Shown: positions 3,607 to 17,495 of the stretch, in pieces
How positions within the stretch are numbered: the stretch's first letter is position 1
How the letters are laid out: every line of letters starts with the position of its first letter
DNA from: Pocillopora damicornis
Lineage: Eukaryota
Direction: 5' to 3'
NCBI RefSeq assembly: GCF_003704095.1
Contig: NW_020847750.1
Span: forward strand, 372,001 to 436,000
Length of the DNA: 64,000 nucleotides
Translations under genes and position numbers: made by a program
The notes under the pieces: generated by a model
Database searches by the model: none
What the model saw: only the letters and a program-made list of their open reading frames with translations
What the model was told of the DNA's origin: nothing

Positions 3607-5111
3607 ATGATGAACGTTTTTCATAATGGTAAGTTTGATGTTTTGGAAGATGAGCTAAGAAAAATGCTGGGGTGTTAGTAACCATGGTAGTATCTGACGA
3701 TTCAGTCTCGTTTTAAGTTCGGGAAGTGCAAAACTATTTATTAACTAGATTAGCGAAGAAACGAAGACCATCCCACCTTTAAAAAAAATGAAGCAATACA
3801 GTCAGTTTCCCAGGTGAAATTTGAAAACAGCAAAAAGGAAGTAGAGACGGAAAATAGTGTCTTGGAATCCAAGAAGAAAAGACGCCGATTAAAAAAAAAG
3901 GAAAATTGTAAATCTTTGTAGAAGCGGAGACGAAACGAATTACTGCTGCACCAATCTGTTCTACCGAAAGAAGTTTGGAATTCAATGAAGTCCTTTCTAC
4001 TGAATACAGCATCTTTAAAATCCCAGAGAAAATTATTTTATAATAAACTTTTTCTTCTTAACCAGATTCTGATGGGAGCGTCGGTAATGACAGCGACCTG
4101 TCACAGTCTTCAATTTCCCTGAAACTTCAAATTGGCATGACGTTTGCTTACGTCATCATCTTTATCATCTCTCTGGTAGGAAACGCTCTAATGATTTACG
4201 TCATACACAAGACGCCTCGACTCAGAACTACGACCAACCTATTGGTGGCTAATATGGCTGTAGCTGACGTAATTATCACATTTTTCGCCGTGCCTTCAAC
4301 TGTGATGTACTTATATCTACAGCATATTTGGTTATCTGGAGTGATTGGTGATATCACTTGCAAGGTCGTGCAATATGGCTTGACATTGTCAATAGCTGCC
4401 TCTGTTCTCACACACATACTGATTGCGATCGACCGTTTCATCTGCGTTGTGTTTCCTTTCAAACGCGTCACATTCTTTAAGAAAGTTAGACCGAGCTACG
4501 TATTAACCTGGTGTGCTTCGTTGCTTCTAATGAGTCCGCATCTGGTTGTTTACGACAGCGCAAAGCTACCAAACGGTAAGAGCTACTGCACAGTAAGCCG
4601 GCTTGAATATCTGTACTTTCTTGAGATTTATTATGTCTTGGTGTTTGTAACGCTCTATTTGATTCCATTGCTGTTCATTGCAACACTATACGCGTTTATC
4701 TGCCGAAAGCTATGGAGGCATAAAGTACCAGGAGTACGCTCCCCTGACCTTATTCTTAAGAGAGAATTCCAAAACAAGAACACCATCAAAATGCTTATCA
4801 TTCTGGTAATAGCATTCACATTGTGTTGGCTACCAGTTCACGTCGTACATCTACTGGAGTATTTTCGGCCTGAATTACATTTGCCTCATGTGGCATTACT
4901 TTTGTCCTTCTGGGCCTGTCACTCCCACAGCGCAATCAATCCATTACTGGTTGTATTTCTTAATGGATTGTACAGAAAAGAATGTCAAGAGAAAATTAAC
5001 AAGAAATTGGCCAGCTTATCAATCAAGAGAAGTACAGGAACAAATATAGTTTTAGCTCCACAAATGAGAACTGCAATATCCCGAGCGCCATCACCACAGG
5101 CCTTAGGATAA
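3607..5111 (+). CDS. Class A (rhodopsin-family) neuropeptide-receptor-like GPCR, ~355 aa (GPCR1)
   Basis: Coding exons 3607-3628 (MMNVFHN+G, donor gtaagt) and 4066-5111 (acceptor ttaaccag, phase 1, in frame with ORF 4137-5111). Seven hydrophobic segments, GN in TM1, NMAVAD in TM2, TM3 Cys and DRF, CWLP in TM6, NPLLV in TM7, N-terminal NDS sequons. Confidence 0.92.
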
Positions 5112-6106
5112 CTATGACCGGTACACACGGACGTTTGGGTAGTTGGGTGGGGGAACCCCTGAGTTTTCACCGAGTTTGAGATGGAAAATTTAGAAGTAAT
5201 GTAACTTTTGATAGATAGGGTACGTAAGGAGTATGGCACGGCCTCCGATGGCATTGGCCTATAGACGATAGCCTCCTAGATAGCTGCCAAAACGGCCACC
5301 AAGATGGCTGCCATGATTACTTCCAAAATGGCTACGAAGACGGATGCTAAGAATTCCTCCATCATACGTACTTAAGCACCGATGTTAGCTTGATAATAGT
5401 AAACGAACCGTTATGATGAATCTAAAATTGACACTTCTCAAACCTCAGCCGGTTAACAATTCGCCTAAGCGATATTTCCATAGCTGTTCTTAATACGTTA
5501 ATACTTGGGTTTATTTATCTATAAAGGAATATTAAATAGGGATTATCTCATAGCCTAAGGAAAAAAATGAATGCGCTTATTATGTAATTTTTCTATTTCA
5601 TACAATGATCATTGAGTTTCTATGTAAGAAGCTCATGTGAAATGACACTGAAACAAGCTAAATGGAGGTACTTAATTTTACTCAAGAAATGAACGAGAGA
5701 TTGTATAGCCGCTTAAGAAAGTGGAATCATGGTTTAAGGGCTAGGTATTTCTATGTAGCACTTAACTTTTTCCTGCCGCGCCGGTTTTTGGGATATAACA
5801 AAGCTTCCCACACAATTAAGGAAGCTTCTTTCGAGAAGTGTTGTGTAATATACCAAAGAAAGACACTAATTAAAATATAGACGCATGGACTCTAAATTGT
5901 TTGACCATAACCTTTACTAAGATACTCTTCAAAATGCCTGAGTGCATCAAGCTCTAATGACCAATTTAAAGCTCTTCCTTCGCACAAGGTTTTTGGATTG
6001 TCATACTACACCTCTACAACTTGACCATAATTCAGCGAGAGACGTTGTGTGACCATCCAAAGTAACTGCGGCGAAAGAAGAGCACTTCAGGATGTATAGG
6101 TCACAA

Positions 6107-14188: not shown

Positions 14189-17100
14189 CTAGTTTTCCTT
14201 TACTTTCATTAGGCTTACTTGTCTAACACACAACGAAGTGTCCCGATCTCTCTCGATTCTGGACAAGTCGTACTTTTCTCTTCTCCCCAGATCTCCGACA
14301 CTCACGTATTCCATGGACATACCTTCGGCCAGATACGCACTCGAGGTGGTGTTGCTTCCCCAGGAACGCACTAAGCTCCCTGCGGGCTTGAAACAGCTCT
14401 GAAGAACATCCTTATTAGCGCGTCGGAAATTTTTGTTCAGGACTATGTAGAGATAGGGATTTATGGCGGAGTTAAGGTGTGATATGCCAAACGCTATCAA
14501 CATTATTATAGGTGATATCGCATTGTAAATTTGTAGATTGAACTTTGCCAATAAGTGAATCACTTGCGCAGGAAGCCAGAAGAGGGCAAAAACAATAACG
14601 ATAATGACGAGCATTTTGATAGTTCTTTTCTTGCTCGCTTCTGCATGCCTGATGTTTGTAGCTGATGGATTCCCAGGGATTCTTCGCACCCAGAGCTTCA
14701 ATGAAACGATGCTGTAAAAGATGGCGATGAGGAACAGTGGAACCAAGTAAAGAGAAACGAAAATGAAAATAAAATAGGTTCGGAACGCCTTGCTGTGATC
14801 AGTAATGGGCGGTTCCCATCGCTGAACGCAATGATAATTATTGTCCCCCCCTAATAGCACTTTGTGAGCATACAAATACGGTGATGCAAACAAGATCGAC
14901 AAGGCCCAGACGATCGAGCTCATCACAGAAATCTTGCGGATTACCTTAGGACGATTAAACGGGTAAACTACAGCGAAAAAACGGTCCAACGCAATTACCA
15001 CCAAAGAGAATATAGAAGCTGCAATGGACAATGGAACTGAAAACATCAACAATTTGCATGTGACCGTTCCCAAGACACCTCCAAACCATCGAGTCTGTAT
15101 GAAGGTGTAGGCGACCACATAAGGCATGGCGCTAAATGTCATAATAAGATCTGCTGTGGCCATGTTCGCAATCAGGCAGTTGGTAACTGATCGCAGGTAA
15201 GGTTTACTCCACACAATGTAAATCGTCATGGAGTTTCCGGTTAAAGAAAACAAGAACATCGTACTGTAGACGACGGTAATTATAACTTTGTGCGCATATG
15301 TTGGGAGTTGTGGAATATTATTCCGCCAAGCCTGGGTGTCATTAAACGAGTCTGGAAAGTAACATTATAATGTAAGGTTAATAACACAGTCACTTTAAGA
15401 ATTCGTCTAATCATATAATCATTGTTTTTAGTCCGTTTCGGTCAACCTAACTCAGTCAATAAGCATTTTATCTTATCACCACTGACTTTTGAAAATTTCT
15501 AAAATTTTTGTATCAACTTAAATGGAATGCTATAGACGGGCACACACGGGAAAAACACAAAAATTGTACAATTAAAGCTTTCCCTTGTCTTTTAGAGGCA
15601 GAAAAAAACATTCACGATTTTATGGAAAACTCGCCTTTTTTTTACTCTTTTCCTTTTTTTAAGTTCTTGTAACAAAGCCGTGTGAGTGCGGGGCCGGACG
15701 GCCTTTTCCTTATTCGATCTTTTAAAAGTGCGAAGACAAATTGCAGAGAAAAAGCGACATCGTTCGAAGGATATGAAGGACATTTCAAAAATTTTAATAA
15801 TCATGATTTACTTTTAATTAAAAGCTTTCTAAATTAGGAAATGGCTGAAAAAGTCGCAAGAAACTTACTGCCCTAAATTTGCAGCATTCTATGTCCACGC
15901 TGACAAGTGCCCGAGAGAGAAGGAACAATTAATCTCTAGAAGATGTTAACGTCATCCTATCACCATTTCAATTCGGCGTCTAACTTGCAGCTCGGTTATG
16001 CCCCAGTTACTGAAACCCTGAGGCGAGGCGTTACGTCGATCATTTTCATTCAAGGATAGCATGTTTCATCTTTTTTCACCATCATTAAAGCTAATTTCCT
16101 CAACAGAGAGAAGTAATGTATTTCGTATAGGATAACTGCTGATCAGCGGTTTTTTAACCATTACCAAAAAGAAACGCTTGGGTCTTTCAGTTAAACTGCT
16201 CTTTGCCATTCCAACATTTATTTTAGCAGGAAGATAAGATTTGGAGGTGTATCACTTAATCAGAAGCCGTATAGATACGAAAGAAATCTCTGTGCCATGT
16301 AATCAATGATTTCCCCGGGGATGTTATTTCTTTTCCTTCATCAATCATTTGTTTTCTTTCAATGAAAGTTTGGTGTTTTTTTTTTTTTGGTTTTTTTTTT
16401 CAATTTTTCTTAACATATGTAATACGGGCAGGTCCATTTAAGGAATAGTTATCAGCATTTGATCTCTCACTAGCCGACTCTGAAAGGCGCAGTTTTCATT
16501 TCCTTTGCCTTCATAAAAACTACGTGGGGGTTTAATCTCTCGATGGATTCTACGGGGGTTAGATTTTGAAACTGACTTCCAATGTCATGTCTTCTAAGGC
16601 AGTTGAGTGTTGATAAGTCAACCGAATTGAATGAAAATGTAGGCGAATTGATAAATCTGACGAGTTGGGGGCGACTCAATGCCTTTTTGCCTCAAATATT
16701 GTTTTACAGGAGCGATCAAATGTACATTGAAAAAAATCTTTTATGGATCGGAAGTTTGCGATCACGCACGAGACCTTAAATATACAGAGTACTCAAGCAC
16801 TTGCTATGAAGTCTTTATAGTTGAAAATTTATATCTTTAACGGAACTGCTATAGAGAGTTTTAATATACCTAGAAATGTTTGGGGAAAGCTAAGATCTGG
16901 TGTACCCTTCCTCGACTTTAGGAAGTCCTCGACTCGAATATTTGTCTAGGATTGTAAACAAAGATTGCGAATATTCATTTTCCGCGTAGTGCTGAGAAAG
17001 AAACTGCGCGGGAAGCCTTTAGAAACTGTTCTTTGAAAGATTCCCCCTACGCTAAAAAGATCTTAACTTTTAATTTTATTTTACTACCTTTCTTCACAAT

Positions 17101-17495
17101 TTCTCTCATGGAAGGAAATATGATAAAGCAATTGTTATTTCAAAATGAATAGAAGTCACAGTATAACTACCTATTACGGCGATAATTTACTAAACACAAC
17201 CCACGCCTGCCTGCATGTATGATACTGCCTCAGCTCGGAATTTGCTTAAAATTTCGTTCTCGTTATCACCCTTTTTTGTTTTAATCGTTTATTAAGTAAC
17301 ACTTGTTGTTTACCAGTTTAGTTCAGGCACTCACTCGTAGAGTATTCTGTCCGGCAAAGTCTGAAGAAAATGCACCACAGTCAAACCGCCAAGACTTAAC
17401 ATATTTGCCCAGCTTCATGGTGGATATTTTGAATAAGACATGCAGTATCTCTAAGACCGTCGTAAAAACTTACCATTTGAAACAGAAACATTCAT
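14189..17495 (-). CDS. Class A neuropeptide-receptor-like GPCR, ~394 aa (GPCR2), paralog of GPCR1
   Basis: Coding exons 17495-17474 (MNVSVSN+G, gtaagt) and 15351-14189 (acceptor tttccag, phase 1, in frame with ORF 15259-14189). GN, NMATAD, TCK, DRF, FWLP and NPYLY motifs. Same 22-nt first coding exon and N|DS junction as GPCR1. Confidence 0.92.

What the first reader, a model, noticed from the sequence alone, without database searches (positions are those of the whole stretch)
3607..17495. Mirror-image GPCR + secreted-protein cassette: candidate linked receptor/ligand (or modulator) system
Seen: the gene order is GPCR1(+) A(-) B(+) GPCR2(-). The two GPCRs share a 22-nt first coding exon and an N|DS junction. 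A and B share signal peptides, four aligned Cys, long motifs (IVTD..N..IYPR.E..KD, LR.W.GEDLK...D.DNQG.VC.DV) and two intron positions/phases. Each GPCR is tail-to-tail with one secreted gene. Inference: a two-gene unit was duplicated in inverted orientation long ago (introns no longer align) and all four ORFs stayed intact. Joint retention is compatible with a functional pairing of an orphan peptide-type GPCR with a small secreted protein, but function is not shown.
Basis: partly seen in the sequence, partly recalled or inferred. Interest (0 to 1): 0.8.

Follow-up and report, generated by a model that had tools for sequence, protein, structure and literature searches.

The report
Two lectin genes between two GPCRs
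The four genes are real, expressed where tested (receptor 1 and lectin A) and kept together in stony corals, but the two "secreted proteins" are sugar-binding lectins of a large known coral and sea-anemone family, so a receptor-ligand pairing with the neighbouring receptors is unlikely and untested.

Summary
Observation confirmed. The order is GPCR1(+) A(-) B(+) GPCR2(-). Both GPCRs have a 22-nt first coding segment and an N|DS junction. A and B share two intron positions and phases, four Cys and the long motifs. All splice sites are canonical, and RNA contigs confirm those of GPCR1 and A.

A and B are not unknown. They belong to the AJLec family of Ca2+-dependent lectins of sea anemones and corals (profile against PDB 6A56, E 1.4e-40; model TM 0.73-0.78). 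The Ca2+ ligands and both disulfides are kept; the galactose-contact loop is not. This genome has at least 57 such matches.

GPCR1 and GPCR2 are rhodopsin-class, neuropeptide-receptor-like and 38% identical. They are weakly supported sister lineages, but GPCR2 is closer to anemone receptors than to GPCR1. The lectin tree does not resolve whether A and B are sisters.

Synteny:
- Stylophora has all four genes.
- Porites has GPCR2 with B.
- Oculina and an unnamed coral have GPCR1 with A.
- An unnamed hexacoral has GPCR1 and GPCR2 adjacent with no lectins.
- Nematostella has the lectins without GPCRs.

So this is an old stony-coral synteny block. Duplication of a two-gene unit is possible but not shown. 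Receptor-ligand pairing is unsupported.

The parts
3565..3628 (+). GPCR1 exon holding 42 nt of 5'UTR and the first 22 coding nt (ATG at 3607, MMNVFHN|). A further 5'UTR exon lies upstream, outside the stretch that was laid.
   Evidence: Sequence. RNA contigs join 3627/3628 to 4065/4066 in 3 runs, and loose ends lie before 3565.
4066..5111 (+). GPCR1 main coding exon: 7TM rhodopsin class, DRF and CWLP motifs, NPLLV instead of NPxxY.
   Evidence: PF00001 E 8e-46; motif scan; RNA contigs.
5112..5896 (+). GPCR1 3'UTR, with the poly(A) site at about 5896.
   Evidence: A contig with a poly(A) loose end at 5896, and ATTAAA at 5869.
5911..6431 (-). Lectin A last exon (CDS 6431-6107) plus its 3'UTR. 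The 3' end abuts or overlaps the 3' end of GPCR1.
   Evidence: RNA contigs begin at 5911-5939 and splice 6431->7235 in 4 runs. phmmer against AJLec gives E 3e-14.
7235..7382 (-). Lectin A exon 2.
   Evidence: splices confirmed.
8358..8415 (-). Lectin A exon 1 (leader peptide; phase-1 donor).
   Evidence: splice 7381/2->8357/8 in 4 runs.
8416..10383 (.). 1.97-kb head-to-head spacer between A and B (a possible shared promoter region; this is inferred).
   Evidence: Gene models.
10384..10435 (+). Lectin B exon 1 (leader peptide; phase-1 donor).
11539..11683 (+). Lectin B exon 2 (phase-2 donor at ..KIR|C).
12297..12458 (+). Lectin B exon 3.
   Evidence: AJLec match E 8e-4.
13598..13754 (+). Lectin B exon 4 (GEDL...DNQG Ca2+ site). 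The intron before it is absent from A but present in Stylophora B and Porites B.
   Evidence: AJLec match E 5e-7.
13840..13848 (.). Overlapping poly(A) signals: AATAAA on + for B and ATTAAA on - for GPCR2.
   Evidence: Sequence only; not tested with reads.
14189..15351 (-). GPCR2 main coding exon: 7TM rhodopsin class, DRF, FWLP and NPYLY motifs.
   Evidence: PF00001 E 8e-45; motif scan.
17474..17495 (-). GPCR2 first 22 coding nt (MNVSVSN|).
   Evidence: Sequence. The model length of 394 aa equals the Stylophora gene call.

Best explanation
The locus is an old synteny block of stony corals. Two paralogous, orphan, neuropeptide-receptor-like class A GPCRs (GPCR1 and GPCR2) transcribe towards each other. 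Between them lies a head-to-head pair of genes (A and B) for secreted lectins of the AJLec family.

A and B most likely fold as small jelly-roll beta-sandwiches held by two disulfides. They most likely bind glycans through a Ca2+ ion held by the Glu of GEDL and the Asp-Asn of DNQG. Their sugar specificity should differ from AJLec's galactose, because the Arg64/Phe67 loop is shortened. The GPCRs most likely respond to small peptides that are still unknown.

The mirror order comes from ancient inverted duplication. I rate two routes as about equally likely:
- one inverted duplication of a GPCR+lectin unit;
- an inverted GPCR pair and an inverted lectin pair that became nested.

Both duplications appear to predate the split of corals and sea anemones. 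I explain the retained adjacency by tight packing and slow rearrangement, not by a receptor-ligand relation. The packing consists of convergent 3' ends that abut or overlap and a 2-kb shared upstream spacer.

Shown: the gene models, expression of GPCR1 and A, the family assignments, the conserved residues and the synteny pattern. Inferred: Ca2+ and glycan binding, the order of evolutionary events and the reason for retention.
For: Lectin identity:
- An AF2 model of the Stylophora ortholog of A (91% identical over the full length; pLDDT 83) matches AJLec 6a56_A, with Foldseek E 2.5e-12 and TM 0.73/0.78.
- A family profile hits AJLec over its full length at E 1.4e-40. A exon 3 scores 3e-14 and B exon 4 scores 5e-7.
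- The AJLec Ca2+ ligands Glu141, Asp150 and Asn151, and Cys15-Cys156 and Cys48-Cys61 (PMC6070535), align with conserved residues of A and B.

Family size: at least 57 matches in this genome. The paper itself counted 29 homologs in Stylophora and 7 in Nematostella.

GPCRs:
- Both match PF00001.
- The tree places the GPCR1 clade beside [GPCR2 + anemone clade] with 81/84 support, and GPCR2 + anemones has 100/96.
- The Nematostella ortholog Nv_GPR43 (EDO38504) was screened against 64 peptides and has no ligand listed.

Synteny.

Transcripts: the splices, and the GPCR1 poly(A) site at 5896 against the A 3' end at 5911-5941.
Against: - No binding or expression-pattern data exist for any of the four genes.
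- The mirror order has been kept across the deep split of stony corals (Porites versus pocilloporids). This could reflect selection for linkage, which my neutral explanation does not need.
- A second lectin-GPCR tail-to-tail pair on contig C2178 of this genome hints at recurrence. About 0.3 such pairs would be expected by chance.
- The Nematostella ortholog of GPCR2 stayed orphan in a 64-peptide screen, so a non-peptide ligand is not excluded.
Confidence: 0.62

Rival explanations
1. A GPCR+lectin two-gene unit was duplicated in inverted orientation, and each lectin is the ligand or a glycan-dependent modulator of the GPCR beside it. Selection on the pairing keeps the four genes together.
For: - The gene order is a perfect mirror, and gene structures are shared within each pair.
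- Both cognate adjacencies are kept in distant stony corals: GPCR2 with B in Porites, GPCR1 with A in Oculina and an unnamed coral.
- Both duplications look comparably old.
- The Nematostella ortholog of GPCR2 stayed orphan against 64 peptides.
- One member of each pair sits on a long branch: the GPCR1 stem is 0.91 and the B stem is 0.43-0.95.
Against: - A and B are ordinary members of a lectin family with at least 57 matches. Apart from one case, the other members have none of the 123 scored GPCR1-like receptors nearby.
- Adjacency is absent in Nematostella for both the lectins and the GPCR2 ortholog.
- An unnamed hexacoral keeps GPCR1 and GPCR2 intact and adjacent with no lectins.
- Oculina (10 kb upstream of A) and the unnamed coral of L044 (6.7 kb beyond A) show no B or GPCR2 next to A, and the Desmophyllum GPCR2 has no lectin within 10 kb.
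- To my knowledge, no AJLec-type lectin is known to act on a GPCR.
Confidence: 0.06
2. A co-regulated neighbourhood without physical interaction. The four genes share a chromatin domain or enhancers, for example because they are expressed in one cell type, and that regulatory entanglement preserves the block.
For: - The packing is very tight: GPCR1 and A 3' ends lie within about 15-45 nt of each other or overlap.
- The B and GPCR2 stop codons are 435 nt apart, with overlapping poly(A) signals.
- The spacer between the A and B start codons is 2 kb.
- GPCR1 and A transcripts are assembled in the same four RNA libraries.
Against: - The libraries are whole-colony samples and the data are contigs, so they say nothing about cell type or expression level.
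- The block has been broken several times without loss of the genes.
Confidence: 0.2
3. Chance adjacency of members of two very large gene families, with no shared history.
For: Both families are large: at least 57 lectin matches and more than 1600 first-look GPCR candidates in 234 Mb.
Against: - The flanking GPCRs are each other's nearest lineage in this genome.
- The arrangement recurs in other coral families.
- My rough estimate for a lectin pair flanked on both sides by GPCRs in this orientation is about 1e-3 genome-wide, before requiring that the GPCRs be sisters. This figure is my own arithmetic, not a tool result.
Confidence: 0.03

Closest known systems
AJLec, the Ca2+-dependent galactose-specific lectin of the sea anemone Anthopleura japonica (PDB 6A56; Unno et al. 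2018, PMC6070535)
   Same: - Same family by sequence (profile E 1.4e-40) and by fold (TM 0.73-0.78).
- Same size (about 155 mature residues).
- The same two intrachain disulfides.
- The same Ca2+-ligand residues (Glu of GEDL; Asp-Asn of DNxG).
- Restricted to sea anemones and corals.
   Different: - The loop after WGC that carries Arg64 and Phe67 (the galactose contacts) is 3 residues shorter in A (Arg64 aligns with Gly) and also shorter in B.
- The pair of Cys that makes the AJLec dimer (Cys3 and Cys122) is not kept as a pair.
- Second Ca2+ site: Asp142 is kept in both, Asn145 only in A, Glu148 aligns with Asp, and Asn21 was not checked.
- Sugar specificity and oligomeric state are therefore unknown.
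Nematostella Nv_GPR43 (EDO38504 / XP_048585527, auto-named 'trissin receptor'), one of 161 GPCRs screened by Thiel et al. 2024 (PMC11087051)
   Same: It is the ortholog group of GPCR2: 51% identity, clade support 100/96. It is a class A receptor in the cnidarian neuropeptide-receptor expansion.
   Different: It is not next to any lectin gene. It has no GPCR1-type partner in the loci seen here. No ligand was found in that screen. Names such as QRFP-like, RYamide, trissin or substance-K receptor are automatic and do not show orthology to the bilaterian receptors.
Physically linked receptor-ligand loci, such as the Brassica S-locus (SRK/SCR) and the basidiomycete pheromone/receptor mating loci (own knowledge)
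   Same: A receptor gene and a secreted-protein gene sit side by side and are inherited together.
   Different: In those systems linkage is maintained by balancing selection on matched allelic specificities, and the ligand is dedicated to the receptor. Here the secreted genes belong to a large lectin family, nothing shows matched alleles, and linkage is lost in several lineages without loss of the genes.

Membership tests
AJLec lectin family | Full-length sequence homology to AJLec | tested here: met
   Profile A1 against PDB 6a56_A: E 1.4e-40, positions 3-156 of 156. A exon 3: E 3e-14. B exon 4: E 5e-7. B exon 3: E 8e-4.
AJLec lectin family | Small jelly-roll beta-sandwich fold | tested here: met
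   AF2 model of the Stylophora A ortholog P0001 (pLDDT 83, pTM 0.78) against 6a56_A: Foldseek E 2.5e-12, TM 0.73/0.78, rmsd 2.8 A. The next hit is at E 6e-3. B was not folded, because its spliced model has no reference.
AJLec lectin family | Ca2+ ligands of the sugar site (Glu141, Asp150, Asn151) | tested here: met
   These align with E of GEDL and DN of DNQG in both A and B. Glu and Asn are invariant and Asp nearly so across the 18 aligned members. Porites B has GDDL.
AJLec lectin family | Intrachain disulfides Cys15-Cys156 and Cys48-Cys61 | tested here: met
   The four Cys shared by A and B are these four.
AJLec lectin family | Galactose contacts Arg64 and Phe67 | tested here: not met
   In A the loop is 3 residues shorter, Arg64 aligns with Gly, and Phe67 falls in the gap. 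The B loop is also shortened. The AJLec paper also says these residues vary among homologs.
AJLec lectin family | Interchain disulfides (Cys3 with Cys122) giving a covalent dimer | tested here: inconclusive
   A has no Cys at either position but has two other extra Cys (C38, C152). B has a Cys aligned with Cys122 but none near the N-terminus. Stylophora B and Porites B lack it.
AJLec lectin family | Ca2+-dependent carbohydrate binding | not testable with these tools
   Needs recombinant protein, a glycan array or haemagglutination with and without Ca2+.
Class A (rhodopsin-type) GPCR | 7tm_1 profile match over seven helices | tested here: met
   PF00001: E 8e-46 for GPCR1 and 8e-45 for GPCR2, profile positions 1-259/260 and 1-260/260.
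Class A (rhodopsin-type) GPCR | Activation microswitches: DRY-type motif, CWxP, NPxxY | tested here: inconclusive
   GPCR2 has DRF, FWLP and NPYLY. GPCR1 has DRF and CWLP but NPLLV. The Tyr is replaced by Val in all 7 GPCR1 orthologs whose TM7 motif could be read.
Named bilaterian peptide receptors (QRFP, NPFF, RYamide, trissin, tachykinin) | One-to-one orthology to the bilaterian receptor family | not tested
   The names come from automatic annotation of hits. Thiel et al. 2024 report no consistent one-to-one orthology between cnidarian and bilaterian neuropeptide GPCRs apart from GPR19.
Linked receptor-ligand gene pair | Adjacency of the cognate pair kept wherever both genes exist | tested here: not met
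   - Kept: Stylophora, Porites (GPCR2 with B), Oculina and L044 (GPCR1 with A).
- Not kept: Nematostella, the L043 hexacoral (GPCR1 and GPCR2 with no lectins) and Desmophyllum GPCR2.
Linked receptor-ligand gene pair | Physical or functional interaction of the two products | not testable with these tools
   No multimer prediction or assay is available.

The most novel reading that the evidence does not exclude
AJLec-type lectins A and B act on the neighbouring GPCRs, for example by binding the N-glycans of their short N-termini (NDS/NVS/NDT sequons) or by presenting a glycosylated ligand. This would make the block a conserved lectin-GPCR signalling module in stony corals. GPCR1, whose NPxxY tyrosine is replaced by valine in every ortholog read, would be a non-canonical partner.
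Probability: 0.06. Interest if true: 0.8.

Novelty: new member of a known kind. Interest (0 to 1): 0.3.

Why it matters
If the plain reading holds, the finding is mostly tidy annotation. It names two uncharacterised coral genes as AJLec-type lectins. It places two orphan GPCRs in a clade with a screened Nematostella receptor. It documents a four-gene synteny block that dates at least to the common ancestor of the stony corals sampled.

This is of modest use for coral immunity and symbiosis work, since lectins are candidate pattern-recognition molecules, and for cnidarian GPCR deorphanisation.

It would matter much more if the lectins did act on the GPCRs. To my knowledge, no lectin of this fold is known as a GPCR ligand or modulator, and physically linked receptor-ligand genes are rare in animals. 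The evidence here gives that reading little support.

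Tried and rejected
- **Pfam on A and B:** no family matched. The UniRef label 'CUB domain-containing' on the Stylophora ortholog is not borne out; the fold and sequence match AJLec only.
- **B exon 3 and TRIM71:** the weak matches to NHL repeats of TRIM71 are short repeat-like chance matches.
- **Nucleotide-level palindrome:** none exists between the two halves. Only microsatellites and a roughly 90-nt MITE-like repeat in B's introns were found.
- **Exhaustive intron enumeration** for neighbouring gene models timed out. 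I replaced it with an HSP-guided search.
- **Systematic adjacency test:** I planned to ask whether lectin loci in this genome are enriched for neighbouring GPCRs. They give one further adjacency, on C2178, where about 0.3 would be expected.
- **Failed look-ups:** Montipora GPCR1 and the Acropora lectin fragment were not on record.
- I reran it from coordinates.
- **Spliced models:** they were never sent to search tools. Searches were done exon by exon by reference, or with database orthologs. The joined models were built only inside local scripts from window and locus coordinates. B's structure was not predicted, because its spliced protein has no reference.
- **Earlier scan notes** held nothing that bears on this locus.

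Full report
**1. What is in the sequence**

The window is G000:C4385:372001-436000 of a 234-Mb, 4393-contig assembly. The nearest named orthologs are from Stylophora pistillata at 84-91% protein identity, so the genome is that of a pocilloporid coral. This is my inference.

I rebuilt the four gene models by hand from reading frames and splice sites:
- GPCR1(+): 3607-3628 and 4066-5111, 355 aa.
- A(-): 8415-8358, 7382-7235 and 6431-6107, 176 aa.
- B(+): 10384-10435, 11539-11683, 12297-12458 and 13598-13754, 171 aa.
- GPCR2(-): 17495-17474 and 15351-14189, 394 aa.

All introns are GT..AG. Both GPCRs start with 22 coding nt, followed by a phase-1 intron, and the junction reads N|DS. B has one further intron.

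The model lengths equal the gene calls in Stylophora for A (176 aa), B (171 aa) and GPCR2 (394 aa); GPCR1 is 355 aa against 362.

RNA contigs from four runs of four studies confirm both A introns in all four runs and the GPCR1 intron in three. They also show three further things:
- The 22-nt segment of GPCR1 lies in an exon that begins at 3565, with another 5'UTR exon upstream.
- GPCR1 is polyadenylated at about 5896.
- The A transcript ends at 5911-5941.

The convergent 3' ends of GPCR1 and A therefore abut or overlap.

**2. What A and B are**

Pfam finds nothing for A or B. A word search with A's last exon finds relatives only in stony corals and sea anemones.

I aligned 18 family members, with the Stylophora ortholog of A as the first row. 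The AlphaFold2 model from that alignment has pLDDT 83 and pTM 0.78. Its only clear structural match is AJLec of Anthopleura japonica (6a56_A), with Foldseek E 2.5e-12 and TM 0.73/0.78. The family profile matches the AJLec sequence end to end at E 1.4e-40. Single exons of A and B also match it.

The AJLec paper (PMC6070535) describes a Ca2+-dependent, galactose-specific lectin that forms a disulfide-linked dimer. Its features compare with A and B as follows:
- **Sugar-site Ca2+ ligands.** In AJLec these are Glu141, Asp150 and Asn151. They correspond to the E of GEDL and the DN of DNQG, which both A and B keep.
- **Galactose contacts.** Arg64 and Phe67 sit in the loop after WGC. That loop is 3 residues shorter in A, where Arg64 aligns with Gly. 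It is also shortened in B.

I therefore expect Ca2+-dependent glycan binding with a different specificity. This is an inference.

The paper already counted 29 homologs in Stylophora and 7 in Nematostella. This genome has at least 57 matches, many of them in clusters. A and B are thus ordinary members of a large, known, anthozoan-restricted lectin family.

**3. What the GPCRs are**

Both match PF00001 at about 1e-45 and are 37-39% identical to each other.

Each defines an orthogroup across stony corals:
- **GPCR1:** Oculina, Montipora and Desmophyllum at 53-72% identity, then a drop to 42% or less.
- **GPCR2:** Desmophyllum, Porites and Montipora at 54-76%, followed by sea-anemone proteins at 46-54%.

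Within this genome, GPCR1's best hit is GPCR2. GPCR2, however, scores higher with three other paralogs.

The ML tree of 43 sequences shows the following:
- The GPCR1 clade has 100/100 support and a long stem of 0.91.
- It sits beside [coral GPCR2 clade + anemone clade], but support is only 81/84.
- GPCR2 + anemones is well supported at 100/96.
- The higher-scoring paralog C793 groups elsewhere, with another Nematostella receptor.

An exclusive coral GPCR1+GPCR2 clade is disfavoured (AU p 0.023). Two caveats apply: I named the group after seeing the tree, and GPCR1 is a long branch.

So the two GPCRs are probably each other's nearest lineage in this genome. Their split appears older than the coral-anemone split.

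The Nematostella ortholog EDO38504 is Nv_GPR43 in Thiel et al. 2024. It was among 161 receptors screened with 64 peptides, and no ligand is listed for it.

All 7 GPCR1 orthologs whose TM7 motif could be read have NPxxV instead of NPxxY; the Desmophyllum fragment does not reach it.

**4. Are A and B sisters?**

A is 56% identical to Nematostella Nv178 and 52-55% to the in-genome paralogs C3420 and C2992a, but only 47% to B.

In the ML trees:
- A groups with Nv178 (82/75).
- B forms a clade with Stylophora B and Porites B (99/98).
- The backbone is a polytomy.

The AU tests reject none of the alternatives: A+B exclusive gives p 0.079, A+B+Nv178 gives p 0.23, and B with the anemone 'type-2' genes gives p 0.29. 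The lectin tree neither supports nor excludes a sister relation.

Intron evidence is also mixed. A, B, Nv178 and Actinia At200 share the IR|C intron. Nv190, Nv192 and At185 lack it and have an intron elsewhere.

**5. Synteny**

| Species or locus | Arrangement |
|---|---|
| Stylophora | All four genes in the same order |
| Porites lutea (the other deep branch of stony corals) | GPCR2 tail-to-tail with a B ortholog that has B's extra intron |
| Oculina | A tail-to-tail with two tandem GPCR1 copies; homeobox genes where B would be |
| Unnamed coral (L044) | GPCR1 tail-to-tail with A |
| Desmophyllum | GPCR1 and GPCR2 orthologs two locus tags apart on one contig; no lectin within 10 kb of GPCR2 |
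| Unnamed hexacoral (L043) | GPCR1 and GPCR2 convergent, about 2.2 kb apart, with no lectin or remnant between them |
| Nematostella | Nv178(-) Nv192(+) Nv190(+) clustered, no GPCR within 10 kb |
| Actinia | Two lectins tail-to-tail, no GPCR seen |

In both GPCR trees, the L043 copies branch below all named stony corals.

The Nematostella GPCR2 ortholog has no lectin within 10 kb, but its current gene model lies on a chromosome of the same length (18.1 Mb) as the one that carries the lectin cluster.

The closest in-genome paralogs of A (C3420, C2992) and of the GPCRs (C793, C1173, C2193) lie on different contigs.

**6. Reading**

The block is not chance. It most likely existed in the ancestor of the stony corals sampled. 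Two histories fit about equally well:
- **Unit duplication.** An inverted duplication of a GPCR+lectin unit occurred before the coral-anemone split. The anemones then lost the arrangement, and L043 lost the lectin pair.
- **Nesting.** A convergent GPCR pair (as in L043) and a head-to-head lectin pair (as in Nematostella) arose separately. The lectin pair was then placed between the GPCRs in the stony-coral stem.

My count of events is 5 against 4, which is too close to decide.

Nothing supports the receptor-ligand idea beyond linkage:
- The secreted genes are lectins of a large family whose other members are, with one exception, not beside any of the scored GPCR1-like receptors.
- The linkage has been broken repeatedly with the genes surviving.

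One other lectin-GPCR tail-to-tail pair exists on C2178. With 123 scored GPCRs in 234 Mb, about 0.3 such cases are expected among roughly 30 lectin loci. This figure is my own arithmetic.

Tight packing offers a simple reason for retention. The GPCR1 and A 3' ends abut. The poly(A) signals of B and GPCR2 overlap at 13840-13848 (untested by reads). The spacer between A and B is 2 kb.

**7. Limits**

- Spliced models were not sent to search tools. Exons were searched by reference, and database orthologs were used for folding. The joined proteins were built only in local scripts from coordinates.
- B was not folded.
- B and GPCR2 transcripts were not checked.
- The genome-wide adjacency test could not be run.
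- The organisms behind L043 and L044 are unknown.
- Signal peptides are inferred from hydrophobic N-termini only.

**Verdict**

- The components are new members of known families.

Noticed in passing
window 4066-5111 (GPCR1), TM7; also L003, L004, L043, L044 and P0043: All 7 GPCR1 orthologs whose TM7 motif could be read carry NPLLV/NPILV in place of the NPxxY activation motif. GPCR2 and nearly all sampled paralogs keep the Tyr. The GPCR1 clade also sits on a long stem (0.91).
   Followed up: partly
window 5896-5941: The GPCR1 poly(A) site (5896) and the 3' end of the lectin A transcript (5911-5941) abut or overlap, according to RNA contigs.
   Followed up: partly
window 13840-13848: AATAAA on the + strand (B) and ATTAAA on the - strand (GPCR2) overlap. 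This suggests overlapping convergent 3' ends for this pair too. Not tested with reads.
   Followed up: no
window 3565: RNA contigs of three runs carry about 120-255 further letters before 3565. GPCR1 therefore has at least one more 5'UTR exon upstream of the stretch that was laid.
   Followed up: no
G000:C2178:315339-319790: A second AJLec-family match (+) and a rhodopsin-class GPCR match (-) lie tail-to-tail 3.3 kb apart in the same genome.
   Followed up: no
window 10819-10912, 12605-12693, 12701-12789: A roughly 90-nt repeat is present in inverted copies (82-83% complementary) in introns 1 and 3 of B. It looks like a MITE.
   Followed up: no
window 13275-13493 and 7877-8064: An AGTC-rich minisatellite (period 4/20) lies in B intron 3, and (AT)n microsatellites lie in A intron 1.
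   Followed up: no
window 36279-36683, 46396-46884, 52942-53502, 62299-62703 (+): Four same-strand ORFs each match the C-terminal two thirds of the Pfam Ras family (E 4e-14 to 3e-9). This looks like a tandem array of small-GTPase genes whose first exons lie upstream.
   Followed up: partly
L003 13945-14934 and 19103-20107 (Oculina patagonica): Oculina has two tandem copies of the GPCR1 ortholog behind lectin A. Two homeobox genes occupy the place where B and GPCR2 lie in the window.
   Followed up: partly
L004 14944-16583 (Stylophora pistillata): A 190-aa gene call without a Pfam hit lies between lectin A and GPCR1. It has no counterpart in the window, where the two 3'UTRs fill that space. It is not a lectin by tblastn.
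   Followed up: no
L002 4380-12645 (Nematostella vectensis): Three AJLec-family genes are clustered. Nv178(-) and Nv192(+) are head-to-head, as A and B are. Nv192 and Nv190 are recent tandem copies with a different intron pattern from Nv178.
   Followed up: partly
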